Origin: Mytilus edulis
Lineage: Eukaryota
Assembly: GCF_963676685.1 (NCBI RefSeq)
Contig: NC_092350.1
Location: 19,778,001 to 19,842,000 of the forward strand
Reading direction: 5' to 3'
DNA: 64,000 nt
Every line of letters begins with the position of its first letter. Positions within the stretch are counted from its first letter, which is position 1. This document shows positions 28,985 to 53,200 of the stretch, in pieces. Below the pieces are notes generated by a model. The model did not search any database. It was not told the DNA's origin and worked only from the letters and a program-made list of their open reading frames with translations. The position numbers and the translations under genes were made by a program.

Positions 28985-29268
28985 AGCTTTACATAAGGGT
29001 ATATATATACGATAGAAGCTTTACACAAGGGCATATATACGATAGAAGCTTTACATAAGGGTATATATATACACGATAGAAGCTTTACATAAGGGCATAT
29101 ATATACGATAGAAGCTTTACATAAGGGTATATATATACGATAGAAGCTTTACATAAGGGTATATATATATACGATAGAAGCTTTACATAAGGGTATATAT
29201 ATACGATAGAAGCTTTACATAAGGGTATATACGATAGAAGCTTTACATAAGGGCATATATATACGATA
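28985..29268. repeat. Minisatellite, ~28-35 bp unit, ~9 copies
   Basis: AGCTTTACATAAGGG(TA)nCGATAGA repeated with variable TA length. Confidence 0.95.
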
Positions 29269-30128: not shown

Positions 30129-33100
30129 TTAATGAAACGGGGGACGTTTACAGGACTGGTTTTCATCATCGTTTGAGGAACGCACAGATATCTTGGTTTT
30201 GTGAGATCCACAAAGAGATTTGACCTCCAACGTTGCTGTATGAACAGGTTTTATGACTGGCTTCTGCATATCATTTGAAGGTATTTTTGAAGTAGTTGAT
30301 ATTTTATCTCCTACAGAAGAAGCTGAAGGTATTCGAATTTCGGGTGACGATTTCTTCGCAGCTGATTTCTTGTCAATGTTCAGACTCCTTTTTGCGTTAG
30401 TTGGTACGACTTTTTTCTCATTTTTTTCCATTGTAGAAACGCATCTGTTTCTTTCTTTTTGTGTGGGTGTAATTCTAGTAGTTTGATGACTTTGTTCAGA
30501 TACAGATCTCTGTTCAACTTGTTGTCTCCTATGTACTTTCGGAGATAGCAGATTTGTTGCACGTTTAGGAGACTGAACTGCTATACCAGCGTTTGTTGAG
30601 CGTCTATTAGGAGTTTCTTGCCGCTCTGCAAAACGTTCACGTGAACTGGTTTCAAGTTGTTTTGTCACGCGTTCATTGAGCACCGGACGTTTGGGATCTG
30701 CATGAGGTATTCTTACATGATGAGGTAATATTGGACGACCGGGAAATGGACTATCCTTGTGAACAGCAGTAATAGTTCGTGCATTGGAAACAACATGTCT
30801 GTTAATTGGTGATCCGTTTGTAGGGTTTGCATTCATACGTGTTCGCCTGTTATTCATATTTGCCACTGGAGTTGTCTTGGCAGATTTCTGTGGAGTAACC
30901 ATACACATTGGTTTTGATTTCCCTGTTTTTTCAAAAGAAGAGTAATTATTACTAGGAACTGACTGCATCATACCATATTCTTTGTTGTCAAGTGGTTTGT
31001 CTCTTATTTCACAATATGAATGCAGTATTGGCACTGGTGTAGTCTTCAAAGGCGTATTCACCCTATCACTTGACAGTGCAGATAAACGACATTTGGCTGC
31101 ATTTGGATTGATATTGGCTTTCCTATCGTCTGATTTGTTTGATTTGCTACTACCTTCAGAAGACAGAGATTTTATCGAACCCTGTTTCTTTCTACTGTCC
31201 TCATGTATGACAATATCATTGTCAGAGAATGAACTGGCAATGTTTGATAAGACATTTTTTACCAGCTTTGTAATAATCTCTGACGGAACGGATGTTACAG
31301 AAGCGTGCTGAATAATATCGATATTTTCCTTTGATTCATTGTGCATATCGGTCATACTTTGAACGACCATTTTCAACCTATCTTCGTCTATCACACCAGT
31401 TTGCAGTTCCGCTTTAACTTTTTCAAGAGTGGCCACGACAAAGTCCTCAACAGTTTTGTCATCACTAGCGGACGATTTAGAGATATTTAGTGAATTGTCT
31501 TGTTCATTCAGAGTTGCCACTGGATATCGCTCAGAAAGGGCAGTTGCTAGCTCATGAACCTCTTTTTCAGATAATTTACCACTTTCTACGTTTGACAAGG
31601 TTTTTGAAACTGCTTCAGACAACAGCTCAACAACTTTTTCGCCAGGTATTTCACCAACGATTTCTTGCTTTGAGCCTCGAGTGCTCTGAATATTTTCATC
31701 ATACATCCTCAGCATGCGAGTTGTCATTTCGGCCATTTTCTGCAAACTCATGGTACGTCCATCCAACAACATTGATTCGCTCACCCCACTTGGTATTACT
31801 AACAAATCAAGAGCCACTTCCGATTCTACAGAAGGCTGAGATGCACCTTGTCGGACTTGGTCATTTGTTCTAAGCTTGTTGTTTTCTAATGTTTCAATGA
31901 TCATATCAATTGTATTTTCTACAAAGTTGTCAATATTGTGATCCGATTCCTTAGATTGGCCGGCGTCCTCCACTGTGTTTTGAATAATATCAGTGACTGC
32001 ATGTCTCACATTTTTATTATTTGGATCTCCGAAATCTCTTTTTATATTTTGAAGAGTACCAATCACATATTTCTTAGTACCTTTGCCATCAAAGTTGAAA
32101 CTATTCATTGTTATTTGTTCTGCATCACTTTCACCAACAAAATCTCTGACTATGTTATGAAGAGCTTCAACTACTACAGCCTCAGCTTCTAGTGAAACAG
32201 TCGATGTACCTTTTATGGAGTCTGAGTTGGTAACAGCCAGTTTTTTGTTGTCTTCTTCTTTTTCTCTAATTGTTTCCGCCATATCCTTAAGTATATTGTT
32301 CATAACATCCATTACAAAAATAGAAGTTTGACTAGCATCGTTTGTTATTCCCTGCATGTCACGCATGTCAGCGTAAGACATTTGGTCCTGCATGTTTTCA
32401 ACAATATCTTGTAAAGTTTCCAGAACGAAATCCTCTATTACGCCCGAAGATATCCTTTTCTGAGCGTTTCCGTACCCTTCTCCTGCTATATTACTTATCC
32501 TATCAACAGACCTATCCAGTCTCATGTTAGAAATAATGTTGTTCAAGGTTTCAAGAATATGAGTTCCAATCTCATTAGAGGATATTCTACATAGAAGATC
32601 GTTTTCAAAGTTTGCAAATGAAGGACCTCGTTGTCCATCTTTTCCTTCTGAACCTTCTGATCCTAGCTCAGTGTCTGAAGCTAGTGGTTTACCACTCAAA
32701 ACAGTTCTTTCAACTCTGGTTAAAAGCTGTTGAACTAATCTATTGGCTACCATTGACGACGCTGTTTTCATTAACATTCCTGTATCTGAATGAGACATGT
32801 CTAGGGTAAGTCCTGCTGACTTCATCCTACTTTTTCTAACGTCACTTAAAACATCTGCTACTGTTATTTTAACGAAGTTTGATAATACACCAACATTCAT
32901 AGTCTGAAGAATACCACCAACCGCCAAAATATCATCGTGTGTGCCAACGTGTGATACAAAATGCCGGAGTATTTTCTTTAGGTAACTGGATGAGTGTCTG
33001 CTGCTGGCTATTTCTTCAAGAATACGATTTAGAGAATGATTAACTTCAGCATTTGATTTTATATTGTCACAATTTTCTGTATCAACTGTTCTCAAAAACA

Positions 33101-35299
33101 GTATAACTTCGCTGGCATCGGTACTTTCTGTTACTTGAGACTGTAAATGTTTGATGATTGATGACACCAAATTTATGATATCATCTGGCATTTCTCCAAT
33201 TATCTTGCTACGTGATCGTTTGCTTTCGTCTGCAAATAACAGTAAATCATCCTCACTAAAGTGACCAGATCTTAAATCCCTATCAATTTTGATGATAGTT
33301 TCTCTAATCAAAGATTCGGCAAGTTCTGAATCGGCTGATGTTGGCACCTCTCGTGGGAACATAACACTGTGGTCATACTGATATTTACGTAGAATAACTC
33401 GAAAAATTGCTCTCACTTCCTGCATTGAAATCTTGTCTTCTCTTAATTTTGAAATGATATTACGCATAATTGTGTTTAATGTTTCGTTTCTATCAAAATC
33501 CTCAGAAAATATCGAAACAGCAGAACTCGCCATGGAAACTAATGTCATTCTGTTTAACTTTCCGTCGTCGATCTCATCCATAATTGTACCCAGTGCAGAC
33601 CGTACGACATCCTCTGCTATCTTAGAGTCATTGGAAGCTACCAGAGAGATTGTCGATGATGTGGACTGCAATATGCATAATGCTAATTCTTTCAACGCCT
33701 CTTTCTCCACATTTCCTTTTTCAAATTCGACCTGCAAAGACTCCAATAGATGTTCGATAAGATTATTTGCTACAGCTGTGCTTGTCAGTGAAGGCGTCCT
33801 CCTTTCCATACTGGAAGATCTGTCGGTCATTTTTTTCCCACAATAGATCAATTCTTGTCCGATCTCTTCCAGATCTTTTGAGTCAAGTAAACCGGCGTCT
33901 AAGTCTGCGAGGAGATACTTTATATGGTTGGTCAAAACTGCGTGCTTATCTTCTCTTGAATCGATAATCCGCTGAACATTGGTCACCATGTCAGCTACGT
34001 CAGACTCAGTAAAATAACCTTTCTGCAAATTCGTGTAAACGACCTTCAATACATCTGTAACAAACATTGATACATTGTGGGCAAATGGGATATCTTTTTC
34101 CTCAATGTCTGTGTTTGAATCTCTCAAGACATCGTTTATTGATGATGTCAGTGTCGTTGCTATCAGTGTTAGTTCATTGCTATGGGCTCCAATTATCTTT
34201 GCTTTTGCTCGTTCAATTGCATCCTCTACAACCAATCTTGCTATTTCAGTTAAAGATCTACCTTCTTCATCCAAGGTTGCAATAACATTATTTGCTATAC
34301 CAGACATCTGTGCTGTCGTTAGAGATTGTGTGGACATTGTTTTAGCCAGTTGTGTAAGTGTCTCTAATTCCTTCGTGTCTCCACTCAGTTCTGTAGTTAT
34401 TCTATTAATCACAATATTAACAAGATCGCTTAAAGATTCTTGCGAAGATTCCTTAAATGACATATACGATGAAACGAAAGCATGAACCACACGATATAGT
34501 GATTCACCTTTTTGGCTTTCAAGGTCTTCTATAATCCTTTGTAAAATTGACTTAAAATTTGTATCTGTAGACTCATGTGTGACATTGGAGCTGACCTCAG
34601 CATTCATTAAATTAAGCATGTCTTCAATCATTTCTTTGGATAGACGACCGTTTTCCACATCATCTGCCAGTGTTTGTAGTGTTCTAATGATGAAGTCGTC
34701 TAGCATTGCATCATTGGTAGGAGATTCTACATGTAGATCTTCATCTTGAACAATGTCTTGTAAGGTATCTTCCACAAATTTATCGATTGCTTTGTCCATG
34801 GACTCCTCCATGTCAACGCTATCACTACCAATGATAGACAGCGTTAACTTTGTCAGGTCTTCTTTGCTAAGTTGGCCTCTTTTTAAATCACCTAGCAACC
34901 TTTCTAAGGTAAACTTAACTAAATTGTCTGCGAGACCGGAAACTTGATACTCGTTCAAATCATTGACATCAAGATCTTGCAGAACTGCAATTTCATAATC
35001 ACGTTTCTCAACCATTTCCATACAATATGTTGTCAGTTGTACAATATCATCTTTCTGAAGTTTGTCCTGACTTAAATCGTCTAGAAGTCTCAACAAAAGA
35101 CTCTCTGCCATTTTCATATCTTCTTGTCTTCTGCGTTCTGCCTCCTTCGCTTCTTCTAATTTGATATTTTCCATTTTGTAAATTGATGGAACAGGTGTAA
35201 CCTCATGATCACCAGTAGGTTTATAAAAACTGGTTGTTAAGCTTTCGCCACTCGTGTGTGGAATCACAGATAGCCTTCCTCTAAAGGAGATCTGACCCT
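30129..35299 (-). CDS. Giant terminal coding exon (5.17 kb) of the FSIP2-like gene
   Basis: 1712-aa ORF in the track; acceptor TTTCAG|AG at 35300-35302 is phase-compatible with the upstream exon 38358-38415. Confidence 0.9.
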
Positions 35300-38200
35300 C
35301 TGAAAAAAAACAAAATACAGAAGAGGTGTCAAGCTTTCGACAGTCGTGTGTGGAATCACAGATAGCCTTCCTCTAAAGGAGATCTGACCTTCTGAAAAAC
35401 AAAATACAGAAGAGGTGTTGAGTTTTCGCCACTCGTGTGTGGAATCACAGATAGCCTTCCTCTAAAGGAGATCCGACCCTCTGAAAAACAAAATACAGAA
35501 GAGGAGTTAAGCTTTCGCCACTCGTGTGTGGAATCACAGATAGACTTCATCTAATGGAGATCTGACCCTCTGAAAAACAAATATAAAAACTGGTTGTTAA
35601 GCTTTCGCCACTCGTGTGTGGAATTACAGATAATCTTCCTCTAAAGGAAATCTGACCCTCTGAAAAACAAAATACAGGTTGTTAAGCTTTCGCCACTCGT
35701 GTGTGGAATCACAGATAACCTTCCTCTGAAGGAGATCTGACCCTCTGAAAAAGAAAAAAACTGGTTGTTAAGCTTTCGCCACTAGTGTGTGGATTCACAG
35801 ATAACCGTCCTCTGAAGGAGATCTGACCCTATGAAAAACAAAAAACTGGTTGTTAAGCTTTCGCCACTCGTGTGTGGAATCACAGATAGCCTTCCTCTAA
35901 AGGAGATCTGACCCTATGAAAAACAAAAAACTGGTTGTTAAGCTTTCGCCACTCGTGTGTGGAATCACAGATAGCCTTCCTCTAAAGGAGATCTGACCCT
36001 CTGAAAAACAAAATACAGAAGAAGTGTTAAGCTTTCGCCACTCGTGTGTGGAATCACAGATAGCCTTCCTCTAAAGGAGATCTGACCCTCTGAAAACAAA
36101 AAAAAAACTGGTTGTTAAGCTTTCGCCACTCGTGTGTGGATTCACAGATAACCTGACCCTATGAAAAACAAAAAACTGGTTGTTAAGCTTTCGCCACTCG
36201 TGTGTGGAATCACAGATAACCTTCTTCTAAAGGAGATCTGACCCTCTGAAAAACAAAATACAGGTTGTTAAGCTTTCGCCACTCGTGTGTGGAATCACAG
36301 ATAACCTTCTTCTGAAGGTGATCTGACCCTCTGAAAAAGAAAAAAAAAACTGGTTGTTAAGCTTTCGCCACTCGTGTGTGGATTCACAGATAACCGTCCT
36401 CTGAAGGAGATCTGACCCTATGAAAAACAAAAAACTGGTTGTTAAGCTTTCGCCACTCGTGTGTGGAATCACAGATAACCTTCCTCTAAAGGAGATCTGA
36501 CCATTTGAAAAAGAAAAAAAACTGGTAGTTAAGCTTTCGTCACTCGTGTGTGGAATCACAGATAATCTTCCTCTAAAGGAGATCTGACCCTCTGAAAAAG
36601 AAAAAAAACCTGTATGTTAAGCTTTCGCCACTCGTGTGTGGAATCACAGATAACCTTCCTCTAAAGAAGATCTGACCCTCTGAAAAAGAAAAAAAATGGT
36701 TGTTAAGCTTTCGCCACTCGTGTTTGGAATCACAGATAACTTTCCTCTAAAGGAGATCTGACCCTCTGAAAAAGAAAAAAAAACTGGTTTATAAGCTTTC
36801 GCCACTCGTGTGTGGAATCACAGATAATCTTCCTTTAAAAGAGATCTGACCCTCTGAAAAAGAAAAAAACTGTTTGTTTAGCTTTCGCCACTCGTGTGTG
36901 GAATCACAGATAGCCTTCCTCTAATGTAGATCTGACCCTCTGAAAAAACAAAATACAGAAGAGGTATTCATTATGCTATAAGAAATTGTAACTGGGTCAA
37001 TAACCCTTAATGCACCTCAAAATGATGAATTTAAAAGTTGTGTGTAAACTCAAAATCTCTGTGTAGTGCTAATGGACATGTTTCTATTCTTTAGAAATGA
37101 CTGAGCTCAACCATGTGTGGTGATTTGGAAAGAAGAAGAACATATAATAATTGTGTGAAAACTATGGAGCTATTACATGTATGTGTTCAAAGTATTAAAT
37201 TTTCAAAGAAATTATTGTGTTAAAAAAAGGGATTTTTTACCACGAGTAGCCGCATCACGAAAGGATTTTAGGGCTATTCTAATTTATGGAAAATGTAATC
37301 TCATTTTGTACACCTAAAATGTAACCAGATTCGAAACGAGCTATCATACATATTCAAGTTTACGATATGGACTGAGCTACAGGAAAAAAAGTTACCATTA
37401 CCGCCTATGGAAAAACAATTAAAGATATTTACCCAACTGACTACTTTATATGGTTCAATATCCCTTAGGTGGCCAAACGTAAGGAACACAGCTAACTAAA
37501 ACATATATCCATTAAAATATTGAATCAAGTGATCTAACTATTAAAAGTATCCCAATTTCAGATAAACTCTTGAATGTTGAGTACCAAAGGCAAAATTCAA
37601 TCAATGCGACATGTGTCTTAGTTTCTATAGCAGTGTGCTTAAAAATATAAAAGTTACGTTCTTAATCACAAGAAAAAAAAAGGAGTTTTAATATAATTAA
37701 AGGAATAACTCTTGAACATAAATGTAAAAATGCTGAAATCGAACTTGACTTGTATTTATTTTCATGGTCCATAACTTTGTTTTTAAGTTTGGGTCAAGAG
37801 AAACCTCAATTATAATCCATACATTTTACACAAATCAAATCGTTTCGGTAATTAAGGGCATAGATATAAGAATATCTTGTATGAATGCCAATGAGACAAC
37901 TTTCCATTTAAGTCACACTTTGTTGAAATAAACCATCAAAGGTCAGAGTACGGCCTTCAACACAAAACTATATGGTAGGGATTTATGTTTAACGAATAGA
38001 GTCAAATTGAAGTATATTCAGAACCAGAACATGTTAATGGTACTATACAGTGGAACTTGCCTTCTCCGACACACTGGGGGACCAGAAAATAATGTCGGTT
38101 AAACAGGGTTTCGGAATACTCAGGGTTTTTATTTTTTTGCAAGGATAGGCCAATTTTGGGACCATGAAAATGTGTCGGTTAAAGCAGGATGTTGGAATAC

Positions 38201-41200
38201 TCAGGTATCGGAGTAGGCAGATTTACAATGTATATAAATATGAACCCTGCGTTGTCCTAGACCGACATTTGCTCGAAATACAATTGGTTTGATGTTTTTA
38301 CTTTGGTTGAGTACTAACAGTATCAATCTAACCATACAGTTCTTAGCTTATACATACCTTCATGACCATCGTAATCTTCGTCATCTGGAAGTGGTAACAT
38401 TTCACTGTAGTGTTCCTGAATAACAAATCAGTTGTTATAGAGAACATAATCGAAATATTTGTTATGAAAACATGTGATCTCCGTAATGCAACACCTGTCT
38501 CTGGAATAATCCCGTACACAACCAATTATACCAAAACATGTATTTATGGTTAGCGAATACAATATTTGATTGTTAACACTAGACCATGTTAAATTGAACG
38601 ATACCTCATATTCCAGTCTGAATATCGAAGCAGTTAATGTATAAAACATTTTTATCCTGTAATCAGCCAAACTTTTGTCCAAATAACAGGCATACAAATA
38701 AAGTTGAGCTTTTTTCTGCAATAGCAATAACACAGTAACCATGAAACGTGTTTCTAACATAAGAGCAAAACATGCAATACATAGTTAACATTTGATCAGT
38801 ACTGTTTAACTATGTTACTAAGAACACATGAATTTTCTTGAATTCAAGGCCGGTAGAAATCCAAAGGTCACCAACAGACATTTGTATCCGACACCAATAT
38901 CACTACTTGGTTTGTGGTAAGTAATATGCGAGGTATATTTCGTGACATTTTAATTTGTGGAAATTACAGTTTACGTATATCCATGTGGATTATTATTAAT
39001 TTTCGAGTAAATATATATGCATCTTACTTGTTTTACGGTATTGTATACATCCATTACAATTTCTCTAGCCTTTAGTTGGAACTGTTCTTCTTCGTTGGCA
39101 GAAGTGTCTTCAAACTTTTAAAGAAACAAGAATACTATAACCATTGATCAATATGCCTCGTTAACACTGTTAAAAATGTCCTGTACCAAGTCAGGAATAT
39201 GGCCATTGTTATATTATAGTTCGTTTCTGTGTGTGTTACAATTTAACGTTGCGTAGTTTGTTTTCTCTTATTTTTTAGTGTAAATTGACATTGCGATAAG
39301 ACGTGTCACGGTACTTGTCTATCCCAAATTCATGTATTTGGTTTTGATGTTATATTTGTTATTCTCGTGGGATTTTGTCTGATGCTTGGTCCGTTTCTGT
39401 GTGTGTTAGTTACATTGTAGTGTTGTGTCGTTGTTCTCCTCTTATATTTATGCGTTTACCTCAGTTTTAGTTTGTTACCCCGATTTTGTTTTTTGTCCAT
39501 GGATTTATGAGTTTGAACAGCGGTATACTACTGTTGCCTTTATTTAAACTTTCTTGGACAGCGAATCTCCAAAACACTATTTTTGACAAAGGAAATTAAG
39601 TACTGATCAGTAAGATCTCACTTATGTGTAAATGATAACCTTTAAGAATATTCTTTTTCAAAGAATCAATGAGTCTTCTTGTATCCTAGCTAAATTAACG
39701 GGCTCTATATTGTAATAAAAATTCTACATCTACGGCCGATTTCCTATCGTAATCTCTTAAACAAATGAAATATAAAATGTCATAACAGACACTTGCAAAA
39801 TAATCCTTGTTTGTGAAATTGATAATGTATTTCCATAGAGTGTTTAACTATGATGGCATTAAAAAATAATGGTTCGGGAAAATTTACGTCGCACGCTTCA
39901 AATTTTTAATATATAGATTTAATTGATGTCTATTCTAACAAGATACATATTTGGAACAATTTCAATAGTTGCAGCGTAAAGAGAACAACCATTTATTGTC
40001 TCAAAACAAACATTTTATTTTGTATTCGACTCGAAACAGTAATGAAATACTTGGGACAGCCTTGTATACAAACAGTTTCTACGCCTTGTACAGATACATT
40101 TTATATTTTATGGCAATGTTTAGTTATTATATATTTAAACGCATATTTCTCGAATATATTATATATGCTACGTACTACAACCATCTTTTGGACGTCACAA
40201 TGCCATGTTGACACATAAAGAGCATATGATGGCTTTTACCGGAGAGAGGTTCATTCGTGAATTGTGGTTAGTGTTTCAAAACAGAACCAATTTAGAATTT
40301 TCATTGTCCCTTGAAAAAAGAATTTTACTAGCTGTGTTTTATATTTTCAATTAAAAAATCCTATTTGTAAATTGGAACAATGATTTATTTCCAAACAAAC
40401 TTAGTGAATTGTTTGGTACGAACATACACACCGTACCTCGTCTCCATATGTTGTCTCGTCAATGAAAATTGATATCTCATCATAAGCATCAGTCAGCATT
40501 TGTAAAAATCTTTCTGATCTCTTCTCTAAAAAAACAAATTTTGACATGTGAGCATATGTTTTCAGTTTGTGGATAGCTACATGACGTAATGACCATAACA
40601 TTAAGTTTTTTTTAAACTGAAAATTTACGAACACAAATTGATACCAAGTTAACCCTACAAGCATAGCTATCATCAGTCTGTTCAATGAAAACATGTGCAT
40701 GTACAAAATGAGGCGGATTTGAACTGGTGTTTTAGCATTCAACTTTTGTTCACGTTACGGTGTTTAATTAATTCAAAGTTAATCCCTAACCTCCAATAAG
40801 ACGCTGAATGTAAAAAAAATGATTTGTCTCTAACGATTTCTCTGTAAACAGTTTCATCCTTACTGTCATACAGCTTACCTTTCAAGTTAGACAACTCCAT
40901 TCTTCTAAGACTTGATACAATACCCCACATGCTGAGGAACTGTGGTTTTCGACTTCGTCTTTTCGCTGAAATTATGAAACAAGTAGTATTATCTTAAAAG
41001 GATGTGTATGCATTATCTTTCACCAACAGTTACGGTATAGAAATCATATAGATAAGATTGCTGTTTTCGATCGTTCATATCTTAATTCCGATATTGATTT
41101 ACAGTGCAGCATACACTAAAGATCTTTCGGAATACTAAGGAATATTATTTCTACGCAGTTCACCTGTCAGTCAGAACTAAACAAGACCAAGGGAAAATCA

Positions 41201-44200
41201 AAATAAATGTAGATAAGACGCTGGATTGACAACAAAAACAGTATAATATTAACTTTAACGTTCTAAGCTCTATTTTCTTGTGCAAATAAACTCATCATAG
41301 ATACCAGGATTAAATTTTGTATTTACGCCAGACGCGCGTGTCGTCTACAAAAGACTCATCAGTGACGCTCGAATCCAAAAAAGTTAAAAAGGCCAAATAA
41401 AGTACAAAGTTGAAGAGCATTGAGGACCAACATTACTAAATAAAGGCAACAGTAGTATACCGCTGTTCGAAATTCATAAATTGACTGAGAGAAAAACAAC
41501 AAATATGGGTAATAACAAACTAAAACTGAGTGAAACACATCAAATATAAGAGCAGAACCACGACACAACAGAAACACAACACCAAAAAGCAACATACACC
41601 GAAACGAACTAGTTTACCCTATAATAATATATCAATGGCCATTTTCCTGACTTGGTACCGGACATTTTTAGAAAAAAATGGTGGGTTGAACCTGGTTTTG
41701 TTTTTAGCCAAACATAAAAGTTTTGCCAAATACAGCTAATTAAGGTACTCTATTCCTGGTTAGAAAAGCCTTAGTATTTCAAAAATTCAAACGTTTTGTA
41801 AACAGTTAATTTATAAATATGACCATAGGAATGATAATTCACGTCAGCACAGAAGTGCTGACTAATGAGCTGGTGATACCCTCGGGGAATTAAAACTCCA
41901 CCAGCAGTGCCGTTCATGAAACAAGAGACGTGCTAGACATAAGTTAAAATGAAACAGTTTTCCTGTGGTCTTGTGTTTGTTTGTTTGCTGGAAATTTTTG
42001 TTTATTTTTTCTTCACAGCATTGAATAAAACGTTTCCTGTATCTATACTACTAACGGAAGATACCGATTTCGTTGAGCCGCATCCCCTCTGAAACCATAC
42101 AAAGTCAGAAATATTTGTGATATGACGTATAAATGTAGTGTTTTGTTCTCCTAAATTTGTCCCTGAAAAAAAAACTTTTTTTGAGAAAAAAAAACGAAGT
42201 CGGAGACTGTCTTATACGTTTTCGCGCATGATCAGTCGACGTTCTTCCCTCGAAAGGAGTATGTTCGATAAGGCCCTAAAATGGCCCCCTTTTTAGCGTA
42301 AATTTCAAATTGGAATTTATTGACTAATATCACGATAAATTATAGCTAATACATTGACTAGATAGGATATAAGCCATTTTGTTGAAAATTTTACATTTCT
42401 GCGTTTCATTATGACGTCACAAGTTTTACTCATATTGATTTTTCACGAAAAAATCAATGAAAATGGGTAAATTTCCAAAGATTATTTGACAGGAAACATA
42501 GAGCGCATACGTCGACAACAAAGATTTTTTAAAATAATGTTTATGAAGACATTTAACATGTCTTATTTGAATATTAAGCTTGTCGACGCATGCGCTCTAT
42601 GTTTCCTGGTCCTTTATTTGGTTGAAATCCAGCTGATTTTGTCAAATTTCACCAAAATCCCTTATCTTGACCTTTTTGGGATGTAAAAATCAACGTGTTA
42701 GAATTAAACTTTGACAAAAACAGCTCTGTTTAAACATTTTCACATGTCTTTAAGGCAACTTAAAACAATTAATGTCTTGTAACCATGAACTTTATAATTG
42801 GGGCCAAATATGGCACTTACCGAACTTACTCCTTTAAAATCTTTTTGTTTCAGCACTTGCCCAATTGTACTGTGATTTCGCTGGTATCTTCTACTTTAGT
42901 ACCAATCTTCTCCTCCTGCTAATTTGCCCTTTTCCAGTGGTTTTAAAATTGATAATTCTTTTTGTAAAGGCGACATTTTAAAAATGAAATCGTGATACAT
43001 GGAAGTTCATTGGAGATGGACTGTTCTTTAACGTCGATTTACCATCCTTAACATTGAAAGTCCAACCAATGACGCACCATCATTTTTAATTTGGGGTGCA
43101 AATGCCGAATTTACCCATAGTCAATTACCAGTATATACTTTTATAGATGAAATACTAACCATTACGCCGTGCCATACTCTTTATATCTGCGAGAGCTAAT
43201 CTTTCTGAAAGACGCCGTGCGTGTTTTCTTTCAACGGCCTCTTGTTCCTGTTTCATTTTTTGTCTGATTTTCTCTAAACTATCTGTAAAATATAATCGTT
43301 GCAAAAACTGAATTTCGTCAGTGTCTTCTATGGATATTCGATGATGCAATCTTATATAAATATGTTTTAGAATTTGACTTATTCTAACGATGATTGATAA
43401 TCATTTGGAACAATAGTTAAAATACTGCTTTTACATGATAGTTTAAGAAACATCATGTCTTCCCTTACAAACAACGTACATTCTATGATGTAAGCTTAAA
43501 ATATGCTTTAAAATTTAACTAATATAAACGGTGATTGCTAATCATTTGGAACAAAAGTTAAAACTTTGCTTGTACATAGTTCACTAAACATGACACATCT
43601 TCCAGTACAAACAACGGAAGAGGAGATAGTACAAATAAAAGTCAAACATCAACATGGATTTCAGTACAGATTCAATATTATAAATAATTATCGTATTCCC
43701 AAATCAACAGCGCGTATAATATCTGCACGACATTAAAGTAGCCTAATATAGACATTTTATTTACATGCATTTATGTATATGAATAAATCATATCCAAAGA
43801 AAAAAAACCACTTATTGGTAAATCTTATCTTAAAATTAAACGATTGAGCTGCATCGTGCTAAAGACATGAAGACTTCGTTTACATACCTTGAAGTTTTTG
43901 TCTTTGGATAGTCGCACGCCTTTCCCTTTCAGCAATACTTTTGTCTTTTTGTTCCTGAATGCGAACTAATGCATCAGCCTCTCTAGATAGTTTCTCTTCC
44001 TGACTTCTCTTTCTAGACTCCCATGAATCTTGTATCTAAACAAGAACATATTTCAAAAGTGTGCTTTTTATTCAGGTTACATATTCTTTCAACTGTGCAT
44101 TTATAACACAATTATATCAGTTTCTAGAAGAATGTATCTATAAGTACAATACGATTCCATATCCTTTTAAAATAACTCCAAATAAATAGTAACTGACAAA

Positions 44201-47200
44201 TACCATGCCTAAGTATGAAAATCTTAATCAATTATAAATAGGGCTATATTCCGTTTTTATGAACAATTAAAGTTGCAAGGTGAACGTCAATTGAACAGCA
44301 ACTCGATGACAAAAATAACTAAAAGACATTTTTCAACAGCAGATAAATAAATAAGTATAATCTACCTGTATTAACCAATATTTATTGTTTATCGTTGATT
44401 ATCTCAACGATATTGATTTTCTCGCTTGAGCCGGTACGGCGAAAGCGAGAAAAGCAATCGAGTTGAGCTGACCAATGACCAATGTTTATCGTTATTTTAC
44501 CTAGACGACGATGTCAATTTCATGTAAATTTCATTAGTAACGCCACGTGCCTACTTAGTTTCTAGCGATACTTTTTCATCTTAAGGATGTACTTAGGTGA
44601 GGTTTTGGAATTTGTGTCAAATGTTCGGACTCCTTGGTGTTTTTCCATATAATACAATGTAAAATATTTTGCCCCATAACACCCATTTATTTTTTCATAT
44701 AAGATTTAATAGCTCATGAAAGGTCATTTACCAAAATTTTAGAAGATTCTTAATTTTCTTTCTTTTGTTTTGAGACCTAATAATACCAATGCAAATATAA
44801 GGTAAAAGTCCGAGTCAGCCTTTTCCCGCCATTTTTTAAATCTCAAATATCTCGAAAAGGAGGTCCATGACCTATCAATATTTTTAGCTTATTTTTATCC
44901 TTAATTGATGCTCTATCAACTTATAGTATCAATTTTAACTTCTTAATTTATTAATTTTCACCTAACCTCACCTAAGTACATCCTTAAGCGAGTAGCATGA
45001 TATAAAAAAATATCACAAAAGAGAGATCAAAGGAAAAATGCAAAAAATAGCGACAAAACTCGATAATAATTCAAAGCACGCTTTATGTTAAGTTAGCTAC
45101 CTTTTGCCTTTGTTCCATCAGCTGTTTATGTTTAGCGTCTTGAAGCCGTTGCTGACGCTCTCGCTCCTGGGTTTTCCAGCGTCTCATCAGCAGTTGGTTT
45201 CTTCTTTCAATCTATGAGAGAGAGGCAATAAGAATTTTGTAATATAGCAGAAAAAAAATCATCTTTGCATTTGTATAAAAAGAATGGAAAAACATTACAT
45301 TGTATTCTAAAAAGAGAATATTATTTCTATGTATAGAAAAGGATCTAACATTTACTACATTTTATAAAAAGAAGAACAAAAGACCATTAAATTTTACAAA
45401 AAAAAAAAAAAAAAAAAAGACCATAAATTTTATAAAAAGAGGGAGAAATTTATTACCTAATATTTATAGAAAGAGAAAAAAAATCACTGCATTTTATAAA
45501 AAGAGAGAAAATATATACGTTATATAAATTTAACAATAGTCAGGAGTTATTAAAGGTGGTTGTTAATGATGAGTGATTGATCGACAACGAAAACACCTTT
45601 GACTTCATGCAGTGTGGCACCGTTAAAGTCCACAATTCCTCTAAAGTCCACAACACCGCTAAAGTCCACAACAATTTTCCGCTAAAGTCCACAACGCCGC
45701 TTAAGTCCACAAAATTTCCGCTAAAGTCTACAAAATGACCTCCGCTAAAGTCCACAAGAAAACACCGTTAAAGTCCACAACAACAAGTTCCGCTAAAGTC
45801 CACAAAAAAGCACCGTTAAAGTCCAAACATTTTTTTTTCATTATCAAAAGACAATTTTCTGTTTTTTACACCCGATATTATAGATCTAATTAAAAGCACG
45901 GACTTTTGTTCTTAGAAAGTATTTCTTGTCAGCATTAATTATATTTTTGATGAATGAAAAAAATATAGTATTTGATTTATCGATTTTTATGCGATTTTCT
46001 ATCAATCAAACATACAACATTTCTGAAAAGCTATCTAACTATTATAGTCTTTTTATTTTTTAGTAAATATTTGTTCATCCACAAGAAACTCCAACATAGC
46101 GTTCTCTTTATGTATATGCTGGCGACATAATTTGGAGCCTATATTCGATATTTAAATTTCCTTTGCAATATCTATAAAACATAAGTAAGATTTCCATTCA
46201 GTGTCTGTTAGGTTCCACAGCAGCCAAAACGGTCCGTAAATCTCAAAAATAGACTTGGATCCATCATGTTCTTTTTTGAAATCAAAATAATGATAAAGAA
46301 TACCACACATTCATGCATTTTGTGGTGCTTAGCAGATTTCCATCACTCTTTGGTTTGCATATAAAAAAGAAGATATTGTAGGATTGCCAATGAGACAACT
46401 GTCCACAAGAGACAAAAATGACACAGACATTATAAACAACTGTTTGTTTTGTTTTCAAAAAGGAAAATGAATTTGTTTCAGAATGAAAGATGAATTGAAT
46501 AAATTATACGCGGATGTGGTTCTGTATTGTGTATTATCCATGATAAGTTTTTTTTCAACAATGCTACATGTATATATATGTTCCAGACAATAAGAGTATA
46601 TCTGATTTGAACCCTTACACGTACAATGTGGACCATATAAGTATACCTGAACGTATACTCGTACCGTATGAGTATACTCGTATGGTTTAGTATGAGGTCG
46701 ACCATACATGTGCATTTGTCAAATTTATCAAGAGTCAGAAAATGAAATAAAAACTTTAACCAAATAAACTAGAGTCTCTAAAGAGCCTGTGTCGCTCACC
46801 TGTATTTACTGATCCTTTGGGAATCATTTAAAATAAGGTTAAAATCATAATTTATAGTATAAGATATCATTAGATACTATAATAATATCTAATAAAATCA
46901 ACGGTACTAATTTTGTTGCACCAGATGCGCATTTCGACAAAACATGTCTCTTCAGTGATGCTCGTGGCCAAAATATTTAAATCCAAAGATTATATAAAAG
47001 ATGAAGAGCTATAATCCAAAAGGTCCAAAAAATATAGTCAAATTCGTGAAAGGAATCAGAGCTTTGTATGAGGGAGATACATTCCTTAATTTATAATAAT
47101 TTCTAATATTTTGTAACAGCAAATTTTAATAACACAAAAAATCCGTATTTTCATGCCAGTAATAGCAAAGAACTCAGGGGCAGCAACCCAACAACTGGTT

Positions 47201-50200
47201 GTCTGAAAATTTCAGGGCAGATATATCTAAATCTAATGAACATTTTTGCCACCGTCAGATTTGCTCTAAATGCTTCAGTTTCAGAGATATAAAACAAAAA
47301 CTGATTTTACCCTATGTACTATTTTTAGCTATATGTATATGTATGCCATCTTCGTTCGCGGGCAGGGTCATCGGAGACATTTTTTAAACTATATACTCTT
47401 ATGATGATTGTGGATAAGTTTAGTCACACTTTGTTTAAGTAATTTCAGAGGGGAAGATTTTTGTAAAAGTTAACGATGACGACGACGACGCCGGACGACA
47501 CCGAACGCAAAGTGATGAGAAAAGCTCACTTGGCCCTTTGGGCAAGGTGAGCTAAAAAGTGACGCTACATTTTTTAGTATGAAATTAAGTTCAAATGCTC
47601 AAATTGCAATTGAAGTTATGGAAGTACATACATGTATATTTTGGAAGATAAGTTTTTAGAACATTTAGGAACGTTGTACTTCAAAAAGCGATAAGCCAGA
47701 AAAGTAAAATGGTCAGAAGTATTTGTCACCTATAATTAGTTGTTATACATATATCATGAAATCTACGGGTATTTTTCATAACAAATATTAGGAACTATTT
47801 CATGTAAGATTTTAATCAAAATTAGTACCAATAGAAGCAGACCTCTCATAGGTTTATTTGTTTATTTGGTAATTTATCTATTTTGAAGCGTTAATTCTCA
47901 ATTTCTGATGATATAACACAAAGTTTATATCTTATCCAAAAAATTTGATTTACACCAAAAATGAAAAACAAAATTAACCGAAGAAAAGTATGACCAAATA
48001 AAAAAAAACTTGCCGACGTATTTGTGTGTTGAGAAATCCAGAACTAATAAAAATAAGTGTCTATGAGCATTGGAGGGTGTGGGAATAGGATAAAGACAGG
48101 ATGTGGATATAGAATAAAGGCGATAGGAACGTTCATCTTGCATTGAACCCGAACACCAACAATTGTTGAACTATCCTATAGTCATATTGATTGATAAAAT
48201 GTACGTCACATCAAAGTTCACGGTATCGCTTTCAGAGTTAATTCGTTTCTTTATTCTCTTTTAAAGATACTTTTTTTGTATTTTGAAAAGGCTAAATGGA
48301 AGACTAGTATGAAGTTTTAAGCTGAAACTTTTACGAATTATATAATATCAAAGAATGTTTCTGTTCTTTTCAATACAATTTTATTGGTTTAATACTGTAG
48401 AACAGATTTAGCGTTTTGTGAGTTTATAGAAATTAATCTTGTGAGTAATTTTACATGTGATTAAAACACTTTACCAAGATAAACAACTAGTGTATGTATA
48501 TTTTCTTAAGCCCCATTTATGGGCATTGGTTTTTCCTTTTGAATGGTTTTACACTTGTAATTGTTGCGGACTTTTATAGCTGGCTGTTCCGTGTGAGCCA
48601 AGGTTCCGTGTTGAAGGCCGTACCTTGACTAAAATGGTCTTTTATAAATTTTAACTTGGATAGATAGTTGTCTTATTGGCACTGTGACTCATACCACATC
48701 TTCCTATATCGATCAAATCAGGTTTTGTTGTGACATTTTGGTAGAAACCCATTCAACGCATCGATATCTGATACTAATCGATAAAAATATAACTTAAAGC
48801 ATAGAATATTTTCTTTTTTATTTGGAATTTATCATACTGGCTTCATTTTTCCGTTCTGAAAATCAAAACAGAAATTAATACCGTTAAACGTTGGTTAAAA
48901 GTTTTGCGACAGGAGACCTTTGGGAATTCATAAACTTAGTATTTTTTTGTTTAATGATATAATCAAGATTGTTGCATGCCGTTCAAATGTTATAGATTAG
49001 GAGGCACATTTGCTTTGTACATTAATTATGTCAAAAAGTGATTATATGCAAAGAAATAAGAGAAAAAAATTACTTGTTGAATGCAGTAAATTAATAATAA
49101 GTAACGAATTTACAAACTTTTTAGAAATGATGTCCAAATTGGCCATCAAGATCAAAATTGATAGAACAAAATCATATACCGATACTGTACTTTTGTCATG
49201 TATCAAACTGATAAAAAAAAAAACTACCGAGAAGAAAGGCCAATGCTTTGTATTGTACTAACGGGATAAAAATAACGAATAATATGTTTTTAACAATAAA
49301 AAAATTGGTGTGGACTTTAACGGTGCTTTTTTGTGGACTTTAGCGGAACTTGTTATTGTGGACTTTAACGGCGTTTTCTTGTGGACTTTAGCGGCGGTAA
49401 TTTTGTGGACTTTAGCGGAAAGTTTGTGGACTTTAGCGACATTGTGGACTTTAGCGGAAATTTGTTGTGGACTTTAGCGGTGTTGTGGACTTTAGAGGAA
49501 TTGTGGACTTTAACGGTGCCACAATGCAGGAACTTTTTAGGAAGAAAGATAAGAAGTTAGCAATATCCTTTAACTCTACTTTCCGCTATATAGATGACGT
49601 TCTTTCACTAAACAATTCAAAATTTGGTGACTATGTGGAACGCATCTATCCCATCGAATTGGAGATAAAGGATACTACAGATACAGTTAAGTCGGCTTCA
49701 TATCTTGACTTACATCTAGAAATTGACAATGAGGGTCGGTTGAAAACAAAACTTTTCGACAAAAGAGATGATTTCAGCTTTCCAATTGTGAACTTTCCAT
49801 TTCTAAGTAGCAACATTCCAGCAGCACCTGCATACGGGGTATATATCTCCCAATTGATACGATATTCCCGTGCTTGCATTTCCCATCATGATTTTCTTGA
49901 TAGAGGGTTACTGCTCACAAGGAAGCTATTAAACCAAGAGTTCCGAATGGTGAAGTTGAAATCATCCCTTCGTAAATTTTACGGACGCCATCACGAGTTG
50001 GTTGACCGTTATGGAATAACCGTTTCACAAATGATATCGGATATGTTCCTTACGTCGTAACTACAATCCCCTTCCCTTTCATGAATGTGACCTACCGAAT
50101 TAGACTATTTACCGGATTTGTAATCACATAAGCAACACGACGGGTGCCACATGTGGAGCAGGATCTGCTTACCCTTCCGGAGCACCTGAGATCACCCCTA

Positions 50201-53200
50201 GATTTTGGTGGGGTTCGTGTTGTTTATTCTATAGTTTTCTATGTTGTGTCATGTGTACTATTGTTTTTCTGTTTGTCTTTTTCATTTTTAGCCATGGCGT
50301 TTTCAGTTTGTTTTAGATTTATGAGTTTGACTGTCCCTTTGGTATCTTTCGTCCCTCTTTCAGTAATAATAATTGCTTCCCGTGATATTGATAGACCTTT
50401 GTGAAGCTTTATTTTGGCAGCAATTTGTTTTTTTTTTTCAACTTTGTTTGTTATCTTCGTCATGATTTGAATTGCCTCCTCTGTTGAGTAAGTTGGCGTG
50501 ACTTGTTTTATGTTTGTTTGTAGCGATGGTGTATGTGCGTGAAACTTTGTAGTAGTGGTGTATTGCCAGTGTGTTTGTAGCGGTGGTGTATGTTTATTTA
50601 TTATACTTTACGTTAAATTCCATATTTTTACTGGCTAATATGAAGGTGTTAATTTACTCTATCACATGGCTGAACGGGTGACAATTTTTTTGAATGTTAC
50701 CCTCTCGTCTCGACCAATCAAAAATCGACAATTCAAAGGAAAATGAATTGAATTTACATAAAGTTATTAAAGAGAATGCGTAAGTTCTACGTTTTGGCTC
50801 AGATTTTATTATTTTACTGTCAAAATAAATTTAAAACATTTTGCTTCACTTCTGTTGATTTTTCTAATACCCGTAATGTTGTTATATATGTGATGTCATA
50901 TAAAATACTTTTAAATACAATTCATCTGTAAAAGACAATAAATAAATTTGATGTTTTTACTGTCTTCTGATTGGTTAAAATTATTAGTTTTATTTTCAAT
51001 GTTGTCAATTTTGATGGCGACACGCCCACTCTGACGTTGTGTATTCATACGCCAACATTTGTGTACGTTGTTATTGTTAATATAAATGATATAAAAAGTT
51101 CTTTGAGCCTTATTTTTGATAGAAATTTATTTATAATGAATGGCAATAATTTATTTTGATTTTATTGAACCATAAAACTAATTTTGGACTCTTCACATTT
51201 TACATAATCCACTTCGCGGATTATTCAATGTGAAGAGTCAAAAATTAGTTTTATGGTTCAATAAATTCAAAATAGATAATAGCCATTCATTAAATAAGGA
51301 TAGGACATTCAGTATAATAAATTGAATAACACATAGCTGAGAGGGTGATAGAGCAGATTGGTACCCCTCGAAAAAGCATTGTCAACTTTGGCTTCGCCGC
51401 GGTTGACAATGTTTTCTCGAGGTAACAATCTGCTCCATCTCCCTCTCAGCTATGTGTTATTTATATAGTGTTTTGTAAGTTGTTTTGCTGGTGTTTGTGT
51501 TTTTAATGAAAACACTAAATGTCACATGTGAATATGCCTATACCATTGGAAGTTTAATCAATCAACTTTGAGACAGTCCCTAGCGAAATAAACTTTATTA
51601 GATAACATACCATCTCCTTGTGTTGTTGAAGTGTGTGTTTCCTTTTCCTCTCGCGCTGTTTATTTCTAGCGTCTCTTATTGACCTTTCTCCGTCTAGTTC
51701 ATTCAATCTTTTCTTTTGTCGCGTTGATTTACATTGATGCTCTCTTTTATATCTATATCGTAAAACAAATGATCAGTATAAAGTTGTTTCGGCATATAAT
51801 AAGTTATTTGGGCGATAGAAAGCGGAGCAGATCCTCATAATATGCTTTGACTGGCTTTAATTAATAAATGTATCATAATAGGAAAACCACTATTTAGACT
51901 ATATGATATATTTAAGGAATGACTGTAATATATTTTTTCTGTCTATGAAGAAATATTATCAAAAATATGTTGCACACTAAATAACCCGCGTTTTCAGTAT
52001 TTAAGAATCTTAAATTATGTCTAAAGACTATGAGCTGATATACAAGACAATGGCAGCCAATCAAAAGACGCAAGTTACATCCAAAATCATATTATATATA
52101 TATAAATTTCTCTATGCACTCGATGGTTCACTACATATACAAATGTAGAAGTGATGTAGTATATGTATTATGTATTACAAAATGTTAATATTTTATTAGT
52201 ATTAGTTTGTCTAAGTTTTTGTATGTTATATAAAAGCAACACGTTCAGTGGACTTTGAAGTGTATGGAAATCAGAATGAAGGTATATTAAAGATCGAGGT
52301 ACATTTAGTTTGAAGTTGATATTGTTGTCAACACTTATCAATGCCAATTTCTTAACGAATAATTAAAAAACTATTGACGGATGTCATAGGAGACAGTCAA
52401 GACCAGAATTTTTGATTAAGGTTTTAAAACAGCTCCCGGTTTAGCCAGCCAAAATATCCGATGCACAAGTAAAATGTAGCTTGACTAAATATACACTTCT
52501 TATGGTTTGACAGTCTGTCACATTTTGGCCTGTGCGTTCGAAAGCAAGCATGTGCGTTATCAAATTTGTTTCCGTTTATTAATTTGATAAAACTTGACCA
52601 AATCATATTTTTTTTTATCTGAGAATGTCGGAGACTGTCATGAAATAGAAGTTCCTTGTTAATGTAATAATAAAGAAATAAAAATAACTTTTGACGTCGT
52701 ATTTTGTTGAGTTCTTCCATTCGTTTTTGTACCATCTCTAGTCTCTTCTTTGTATAACTCTCTTGAAGATCATTTGAAGTACTTCTTCTTGAATCTGCCA
52801 TACATTGCTTGGAAATATCAAAATTCATAACATTCATTTAAATTCTGGTAGTAAACCATCTGGTTTTTAATTGAGAGCTGTCTACACATTTTTCTTTAAA
52901 ATAGAATTGTTGTCAAATTTCTGTTTTAGTATCAGCAAAACAATTGACTTTTGGACAAAACACAAACTGCTAATGGTGCGATATCATCTCGTACATAAAT
53001 TTTTTATTAGACTTGTTAAAGTTTCTCAAGTAGACAGATATCAAAAAGTTAGGCCAGCATTACTTGTAGTATTATTGAACAAGTGGTATATCAAACATCA
53101 ATACAGTGATGACCATGTTTATTTTGTCTGGATAGTTCTTGTAGAGAGATTGCTATCCTGTTCGATTCATATGTTGTATTGATTATAACGATGTTTTCAT

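What the first reader, a model, noticed from the sequence alone, without database searches (positions are those of the whole stretch)
35229..36965. About 20 tandem copies of a 3' splice site in front of a 5-kb exon, where only the last looks productive
Seen: each ~88-bp unit has a polypyrimidine tract, usually (C/T)AG, and the first ~22 codons (EGQISFRGRLSVIPHTSGESLT) of the giant exon. The penultimate acceptor is 92 nt upstream of the last and its frame ends ..GSDLL*; unit lengths vary through poly-T slippage. The spliceosome would have to bypass ~19 near-identical earlier acceptors to make full-length protein. Inference: a copy-number-variable splicing rheostat or decoy array producing NMD or truncated isoforms, stepwise re-splicing, or a recent expansion crippling this allele.
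Basis: partly seen in the sequence, partly recalled or inferred. Interest (0 to 1): 0.8.

Follow-up and report, generated by a model that had tools for sequence, protein, structure and literature searches.

The report
Tandem pseudo splice acceptors in mussel gene
A mussel gene carries about 19 extra tandem copies of one intron-exon junction inside its intron, yet assembled RNA joins the upstream exon to the genuine, last acceptor, so this is a large example of a known kind of splice-junction repeat and not a new splicing device.

Summary
At 35225-36965 (gene on the minus strand) there are 20 head-to-tail units of 85-92 bp (one of 71). Each holds a branch-like motif, a pyrimidine tract, mostly CAG, and the first about 22 codons of a 5.2-kb stop-containing exon. 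All 19 upstream acceptors run into a stop after 7-121 codons.

In 3 of 3 RNA runs (2 studies) the assembled transcript joins donor 38358 directly to the last acceptor at 35299, and no RNA contig lies in the array. So this allele is not crippled, and stepwise re-splicing is not the main route. Minor use of upstream sites stays open. A Mytilus galloprovincialis RefSeq isoform X2 (529 aa) ends exactly as an upstream-acceptor product would. Two older M. edulis models hold an in-frame penultimate unit that adds 30 aa.

The kind is already described: amphioxus "mirages" (PMC3087553) and, for donors, the human F7 intron 7 repeat (PMC1557585). This scan had already noted splice-junction minisatellites on other DNA of this genome (s1-832289, s1-832300).

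The gene is FSIP2-like at its N-terminus.

Verdict: new member of a known kind, modest interest.

The parts
35300..36965 (-). Array of 19 pseudo-acceptor units inside intron 11. Each holds an exon-like 66-70 nt, a spacer/T-run and CAG (14 units), CAT (4) or CAA (1).
35229..35299 (-). Start of the genuine exon. It is repeat unit 20, the part homologous to the array: AG GGT CAG ... ACC AGT TTT TAT.
   Evidence: RNA contigs begin the exon here.
30129..35299 (-). Giant stop-containing exon 12 (5171 nt) with stop TAA at 30131-30129. It encodes the C-terminal 1723 residues of a 2212-aa protein.
   Evidence: RNA contigs
35300..38357 (-). Intron 11 (3058 nt), GT..AG. Its 3' 1.67 kb is the array. Its 5' part holds high-copy dispersed repeats.
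   Evidence: joint 35299/38358, skips 3058, ends CT..AC on the + strand, in 3 of 3 RNA runs..
38358..38414 (-). Exon 11 (57 nt), ending ..GGT CAT GAA G, with donor AAG|GTATGT. It gives the first base of the split codon.
39027..39116 (-). Exon 10, joined to exon 11 in the same RNA contigs. The boundary is uncertain by 1 nt.
30129..55475 (-). Whole coding span of the FSIP2-like gene: 12 coding exons mapped with the M. edulis RefSeq protein XP_071120048.1.

Best explanation
This is a splice-junction minisatellite (a 'mirage'). The last about 20-30 nt of intron 11 plus the first about 66 nt of the giant exon of an FSIP2-like gene were duplicated in tandem. Several different exon-to-intron breakpoints occur at or near short T-rich stretches. 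The array was then amplified and reshuffled by unequal exchange and slippage to 19 extra copies, all lying in the intron. The extra copies are pseudo-acceptors. The spliceosome pairs donor 38358 with the copy that is followed by real exon sequence (35299), and the whole array is removed as part of the 3058-nt intron. I infer, but have not shown, that the choice is made by sequence context beyond the repeated 66 nt. The genuine exon continues into a purine-rich stretch, whereas each pseudo-exon runs into the next pyrimidine tract with no donor behind it. Occasional use of an upstream copy gives a truncated product of about 500-610 aa, or a 30-aa insertion in alleles where a T-run length restores the frame. 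I regard these as by-products and not a regulated output.
For: Array anatomy and uniqueness to this locus. The exon start existed before the array. The motif G-x-[IV]-[SK]-F-[RG] at this position is present in a 51%-identical relative (P0003, with no second copy in the 43 codons read upstream of it) and aligns in scallop and oyster orthologues. At least four spacer types show repeated rounds of duplication: CTTAAC-ACCTCTTCTGTATTTTG, AACC-TGTATTTTG, CCAG-T(n), and CCAGTTTTTATA-TTTG, which keeps extra exon letters. There are nearest-neighbour pairs at distance 7 (u7/u14 95.5%, u8/u15 97.6%) and an identical pair u12=u13. Major splicing goes to the last acceptor: the joint 38358 to 35299 is present in contigs of X15, X16 (study P7) and X17 (study P8), 3 of 3 RNA runs. 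Each contig runs on into unique exon sequence, and RNA contig depth over 35389-36980 is zero. RefSeq models of M. edulis, M. trossulus and M. galloprovincialis X1, and a fourth model (VDI04561), all read ..DYDGHE-EG(Q/E)ISFRGRLSVIP.. with one copy. The last acceptor is not intrinsically the best. Upstream sites 3, 4, 5, 8 and 15 have CAG, pyrimidine runs of 13-16 (the last site has 8) and a TTAAC or CTTAT branch-like motif 24-27 nt upstream, which is why I place the choice in the context. The same behaviour is described for amphioxus mirages, including one made of an intron 3' end plus an exon 5' part; there regular splicing was not disturbed (PMC3087553 passages; PMC3902484 passage). It is also described for the F7 donor repeat (PMC1557585 abstract and passages).
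Against: All RNA evidence is Logan contigs, which drop rare variants and give no quantities, so any minor share of upstream-acceptor products is invisible. One further joint was not shown. If upstream-spliced RNAs are degraded, steady-state RNA would look the same even with substantial decoy use. M. galloprovincialis isoform X2 shows that an annotation pipeline found grounds for an upstream-acceptor transcript. The contextual mechanism (enhancers in the true exon, silencing over repeated pyrimidine tracts) is inference and no assay was run. Array lengths in the individuals behind the RNA runs are unknown.
Confidence: 0.72

Rival explanations
1. The array works as a decoy or rheostat. A meaningful share of transcripts is spliced to upstream acceptors. 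This lowers full-length FSIP2-like output or makes a short protein of about 500-610 aa with the N-terminal part only, and the share depends on copy number and T-run lengths.
For: 14 of 19 upstream units keep CAG, and 11 of those 14 have a branch-like motif 23-28 nt upstream with good pyrimidine tracts. M. galloprovincialis isoform X2 (XP_076114363.1, 529 aa) ends ..EGQISFRGRLSVIPHTSGESLTTSFLVFQRVRSPLEEGYL*, exactly an upstream-acceptor product. The premature stops lie in the stop-containing exon, so junction-dependent decay need not remove such RNAs; that follows from general knowledge of NMD and was not tested in molluscs.
Against: No RNA contig in 3 of 3 runs lies in the array or joins 38358 to an upstream unit. 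5 of 19 units have lost the canonical AG, which shows no sign of selection to keep decoys. The short product has no Pfam domain of its own. Comparable repeats elsewhere are reported as silent.
Confidence: 0.18
2. Stepwise (recursive) removal: the intron is spliced unit by unit through the array until the last acceptor is reached.
For: Many evenly spaced acceptors lie in a 3-kb intron. A weak donor-like AGG|GTCAGA sits 3 nt inside each unit.
Against: Ligation of exon 11 (..GAAG) to a unit (AGGGTC..) gives no GT at the junction. Use of the GT 3 nt further on would add one codon per step, yet contigs skip exactly 3058 nt and 5 of 5 single-copy models read HE-EG with no extra residue.
Confidence: 0.03
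3. Assembly artefact or an allele-specific recent blow-up: the real locus has one or a few copies.
For: Copy number was not verified with long genomic reads. Short-read contigs break at the array.
Against: Units are 61-100% (mean 85%) alike, with several spacer types and a deletion variant, which mis-assembly does not produce. Other assemblies and species encode at least two units. The DNA-type run X1 has contigs inside the array, one at about three times single-copy depth.
Confidence: 0.05

Closest known systems
[quoted passage not shown]
   Same: These are tandem repeats whose end unit is the gene's own exon-intron boundary. BflGb6 duplicates the intron 3' end plus the exon 5' part, as here. 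Many units keep AG/GT signals, regular splicing is not disturbed, units are 81-100% alike, and haplotypes differ in copy number (PMC3087553 passages; PMC3902484 passage).
   Different: This one is in a mollusc, not a cephalochordate. It has 19 extra copies against 3-6 in BflGb6, with a shorter unit (85-92 bp against 150-160 bp), in front of a 5.2-kb stop-containing exon. A sister-species database isoform uses a pseudo-acceptor. Copy-number polymorphism is not shown directly here.
Human F7 intron 7 37-bp VNTR with repeated 5' pseudo-sites
   Same: A minisatellite whose boundary unit spans the exon-intron junction, so 5-9 identical splice sites compete. Only the exon-adjacent one is used, although the others are functional when tested (PMC1557585 abstract and Discussion passages).
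   Different: In F7 the donor is repeated and the most upstream copy wins. Here the acceptor is repeated and the most downstream copy wins. In both cases the winner is the copy attached to the real exon.
Engineered tandem duplications of globin splice sites (Lang and Spritz 1983; Kuhne et al. 1983), as cited in PMC1557585
   Same: These test which of two duplicated acceptors is chosen.
   Different: I saw only the citing passage and reference list. It says splicing went to the 'proximal' copy in one study, with opposite results in another. The mussel array uses the copy farthest from the donor, which does not fit a simple 5'-to-3' scan from the donor. I did not read the original papers.
NAGNAG and other short-range tandem acceptors (recalled, not searched)
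   Same: More than one AG is available to one intron.
   Different: Those lie 3 to a few nt apart and share one branch point and tract. Here each copy brings its own branch-like motif and tract, at a spacing of 85-92 nt.

Membership tests
Splice-junction minisatellite ('mirage') | Tandem repeat whose terminal unit spans the gene's own exon-intron boundary | tested here: met
   Unit 20 is the real acceptor plus exon start, and 19 further units lie directly upstream.
Splice-junction minisatellite ('mirage') | Unit derived from the local boundary, not from a dispersed repeat | tested here: met
   All 10 genome matches lie inside the array. The exon-start motif is conserved in other bivalves.
Splice-junction minisatellite ('mirage') | Regular splicing to the authentic site is kept | tested here: met
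   The joint 38358 to 35299 is in contigs of 3 of 3 RNA runs, with no RNA contig in the array. This covers the major form only.
Splice-junction minisatellite ('mirage') | Length or sequence instability between haplotypes | tested here: inconclusive
   Older M. edulis models P0001 and P0009 carry a different proximal unit of 90 nt, in frame, against 92 nt here. No copy-number data.
F7-type VNTR of pseudo 5' splice sites | The repeated element is the donor site and the most upstream copy is used | tested here: not met
   Here the acceptor is repeated and the most downstream copy is used. This is an analogy only.
Recursive splice sites | An acceptor directly followed by a sequence that rebuilds a GT donor after ligation | tested here: not met
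   The junction would read GAAG|AGGGTC. There is no extra codon in the contigs or protein models.
FSIP2 (fibrous sheath-interacting protein 2) | Pfam FSIP2 repeat domain PF15783 | tested here: not met
   No Pfam hit above threshold for P0012 or for the giant exon.
FSIP2 (fibrous sheath-interacting protein 2) | Shared N-terminal region | tested here: met
   Pangolin FSIP2 isoforms match at E 7e-13 and 1e-10. Pairwise, residues 49-223 against 41-205 give 34% identity, E 2e-19.

The most novel reading that the evidence does not exclude
The array is a natural, copy-number-variable dial on an FSIP2-like gene. A variable share of transcripts ends on pseudo-acceptors and yields a short N-terminal protein, as in M. 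galloprovincialis isoform X2. T-run slippage can switch the proximal unit between a stop and a 30-aa in-frame extension, as in the older M. edulis models, so new exon sequence would be caught in the act of being born from a junction repeat.
Probability: 0.12. Interest if true: 0.6.

Novelty: new member of a known kind. Interest (0 to 1): 0.3.

Why it matters
It is an unusually large natural test of 3' splice-site choice. Fourteen upstream acceptors keep CAG, several with a better pyrimidine tract than the real one, and all are skipped in favour of the copy attached to true exon sequence. That argues for context-driven choice, against choice by order or by site strength. It also extends junction minisatellites from amphioxus and one human gene to bivalves, where earlier notes of this scan suggest they are common. 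For annotation it is a practical warning: one public M. edulis model inserts 30 residues from the penultimate unit, and one M. galloprovincialis isoform is truncated by it.

Tried and rejected
Dispersed satellite or transposon origin is rejected, because the unit occurs only at this locus.

Units acting as mini-exons are rejected. Unit lengths are not multiples of 3, and the only GT-containing spacers would make introns of about 16 nt.

Coding repeat is rejected: every upstream frame stops within 7-121 codons.

Recursive splicing is rejected for the major product (see rivals).

I looked for selection on the acceptor signals. Column conservation is uniformly high across the exon-like part, and the canonical AG is lost in 5 of 19 units from about two mutational events (CAT four times, CAA once). 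This is not informative either way.

A metagenome scan for the unit core found 0 matches.

Cross-species statements therefore rest on protein models only.

A literature search for disease duplications of acceptors gave nothing useful.

I did not open supplementary files. Additional files 4-6 of PMC3087553 (mirage alignments and trees) may bear on how close the parallel is.

I searched no joined (spliced) model. Exons were mapped one by one with a database protein.
Full report
**What is there.** The window is C7:19778001-19842000 of a 1.37-Gb, 32% G+C genome. Protein matches of 100% identity named Mytilus edulis agree with earlier notes of this scan that it is the blue mussel. Tandem Repeats Finder gives one large array at 35225-36953, period 85-89 (a 174-nt double unit in the distal half), about 20 copies and 89% matches. 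Among the 13 rows for the whole window it is by far the largest.

The gene lies on the minus strand. I mapped its 12 coding exons with the M. edulis RefSeq protein XP_071120048.1 (P0012, 2212 aa), from 55475 down to the stop TAA at 30131-30129. Exon 11 is 38414-38358 and ends ..CAT GAA G, followed by gtatgt. Exon 12 starts at 35299 behind ttttttttcag and runs 5171 nt to the stop.

**Anatomy of the array.** There are 20 homologous acceptor positions: 36939, 36853... 35391, 35299.
- Each unit has about 66 nt equal to the exon start (AG GGT CAG ATC TCC TTT AGA GGA AGG ... GAA AGC TTA ACA ACC AG), then a spacer/T-run, then the next CAG.
- 15 of 20 positions have CAG (14 of the 19 upstream). Four have CAT (one shared change in related units, leaving a TAG 2 nt further on). 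One has CAA.
- The coding letters GCTTAAC supply a branch-like YTNAY motif 23-28 nt before the AG in 11 of the 14 upstream CAG sites.
- By these simple measures the last acceptor is not the best. Its pyrimidine run is 8, against 13-16 at sites 3, 4, 5, 8 and 15.
- All 19 upstream acceptors meet a stop after 7-121 codons.
- The penultimate one is 92 nt upstream and reads ...FFQRVRSPLEEGYL*.

**Origin.**
- The unit occurs nowhere else in the genome.
- The exon start is old coding sequence. A 51%-identical relative has GHISFRSRASVIP at the same place, with no second copy in the 43 codons read upstream of it. Scallop and oyster orthologues align there with QGKAVKFG and KGKVKFG. So the array was copied from the boundary, not the exon from a repeat.
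- The spacers come in at least four types. One keeps extra exon letters (CCAGTTTTTATA joined to TTTGTTTTTCAG). Another keeps 25 nt of the original intron end, which is also seen before unit 1. The array therefore grew in several rounds.
- Nearest-neighbour pairs at distance 7 (u7/u14, u8/u15) and an identical pair (u12=u13) show block duplication. Mean pairwise identity is 85%.
- The three units next to the real exon are the most diverged from it (7-8 of 70 columns). u12 and u13 are identical to it. I leave that pattern unexplained beyond ordinary repeat turnover.

**Which acceptor is used.** I had one call each of the look-up of sequencing runs and read laying, on window 33200-39150, with three RNA runs (X15 and X16 from one study, X17 from another) and one DNA-type run (X1). 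All are Logan contigs.
- In 3 of 3 RNA runs one contig joins 38358 to 35299 (skips 3058; CT..AC on the + strand, which is GT..AG on the gene strand). The same contig joins 39027 to 38414.
- Each contig runs on from 35299 into unique exon sequence, so the junction is to the unit attached to the exon.
- RNA contig depth is zero in every bin from 35389 to 36980.
- The X17 contig differs from the window at 56 of about 2100 positions, and X15 and X16 at a handful, so the same junction holds in diverged animals.
- The X1 contig stops at 35254, where the repeat begins. X1 has patchy contigs inside the array, one at about three times single-copy depth.
- Limits: contigs drop rare variants and give no quantities, and one further joint was not listed.

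**Database models.**
- Single-copy junctions (..DYDGHE-EGQISFRGRLSVIP..TTSFYKPTGD..) appear in 5 models: M. edulis XP_071120048.1, M. trossulus XP_063400695.1, M. galloprovincialis XP_076114362.1 (X1) and VDI04561.1. These have one copy each.
- M. galloprovincialis isoform X2 (XP_076114363.1, 529 aa) ends ..TTSFLVFQRVRSPLEEGYL*. That is a splice to an upstream unit read through the next tract, so that species also has at least two units, and a pipeline found grounds for such a transcript. I could not see its evidence.
- Two older M. edulis models (CAG2232205.1, CAG2216331.1) use a penultimate unit that is in frame and adds 30 residues (..SEIPHTSGESLTPLLYFVFS-EGQ..). This implies a 90-nt unit with a T-run of 6 where the window has 92 nt and 8 T, and other letter differences. 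The proximal part of the array therefore varies between haplotypes.

**Mechanism.**
- Shown: the array is intronic in the main mRNA, the exon-attached acceptor is used, and upstream sites look competent by sequence.
- Inferred: the choice depends on what follows the repeated 66 nt. The real exon goes on into a purine-rich stretch (GAAGAAGCGAAGGAGGCAGAACGCAGAAGACAAGAAG). Each pseudo-exon meets another pyrimidine tract and has no donor.
- Stepwise re-splicing is disfavoured. GAAG|AGGGTC has no GT at the junction, and the GT 3 nt on would add a codon that is not seen.
- Because the premature stops lie in the exon that carries the normal stop, junction-dependent decay need not apply. Whether long-3'-UTR decay does in molluscs is unknown to me. 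This rests on general knowledge and was not tested.

**Comparison with what is known.** Earlier notes of this scan on other DNA of this genome (s1-832289, s1-832300) pointed me to amphioxus 'mirages'. I then read the relevant passages.
[quoted passage not shown] These include the 3' end of an intron plus the 5' part of exon 2 of globin BflGb6: 3 and 6 units in two haplotypes, 150-160 bp, 81-100% identity, many with AG/GT signals, and regular splicing not disturbed.
- PMC3902484 says the same of Adh, troponin C and PGBD5.
- PMC1557585 (abstract and Discussion passages) describes the human F7 intron 7 37-bp repeat. Its first unit spans the exon-intron boundary, giving 5-9 identical donors of which only the exon-adjacent one is used.
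- The mussel array is the acceptor-side counterpart, with more copies.
- My searches for acceptor-side minisatellites turned up no other named case beyond these. That is no proof that none is in print.

**The gene.** There is no Pfam family above threshold. The N-terminal region matches mammalian fibrous sheath-interacting protein 2 (E 7e-13 and 1e-10; 34% identity over residues 49-223, E 2e-19). Orthologues of about 1900-2750 aa exist in oysters, scallops, abalone and Dreissena. The RefSeq name 'fap1 adhesin-like' is probably a low-complexity artefact; that is my opinion.

**Verdict.** This is a new, unusually large member of a known kind, the splice-junction minisatellite. A minor decoy role stays open at about 0.1-0.2.

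Noticed in passing
window 36981-38373: The 5' part of intron 11 carries very high-copy dispersed repeats. The DNA-type run X1 shows summed contig depth up to about 71,000 against about 20 for single-copy sequence, and RNA contigs of other origin also land there.
   Followed up: no
window 21648-27156 and 30129-35299: The public M. edulis model CAG2232205.1 (P0001) fuses this FSIP2-like gene to the neighbouring IGFBP/thyroglobulin-type-1 gene (Pfam PF00219, PF00086). It is probably a chimeric prediction, because RefSeq splits them.
   Followed up: partly
window 28985-29268: A 32-nt (66/98-nt higher order) tandem repeat, 8.9 copies, 90% matches, lies about 0.9 kb beyond the gene's stop codon.
   Followed up: no
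window 35915-36084 (units 12 and 13): Two adjacent units are identical to each other and to the first 70 aligned columns of the real exon, while the three units next to the exon are the most diverged (7-8 differences). This is an odd gradient for a boundary repeat.
   Followed up: partly
window 30129-55475: The gene shares only its N-terminal region of about 175 residues with vertebrate FSIP2 and has a single giant exon. The public names ('fap1 adhesin-like', 'uncharacterized') miss this.
   Followed up: partly
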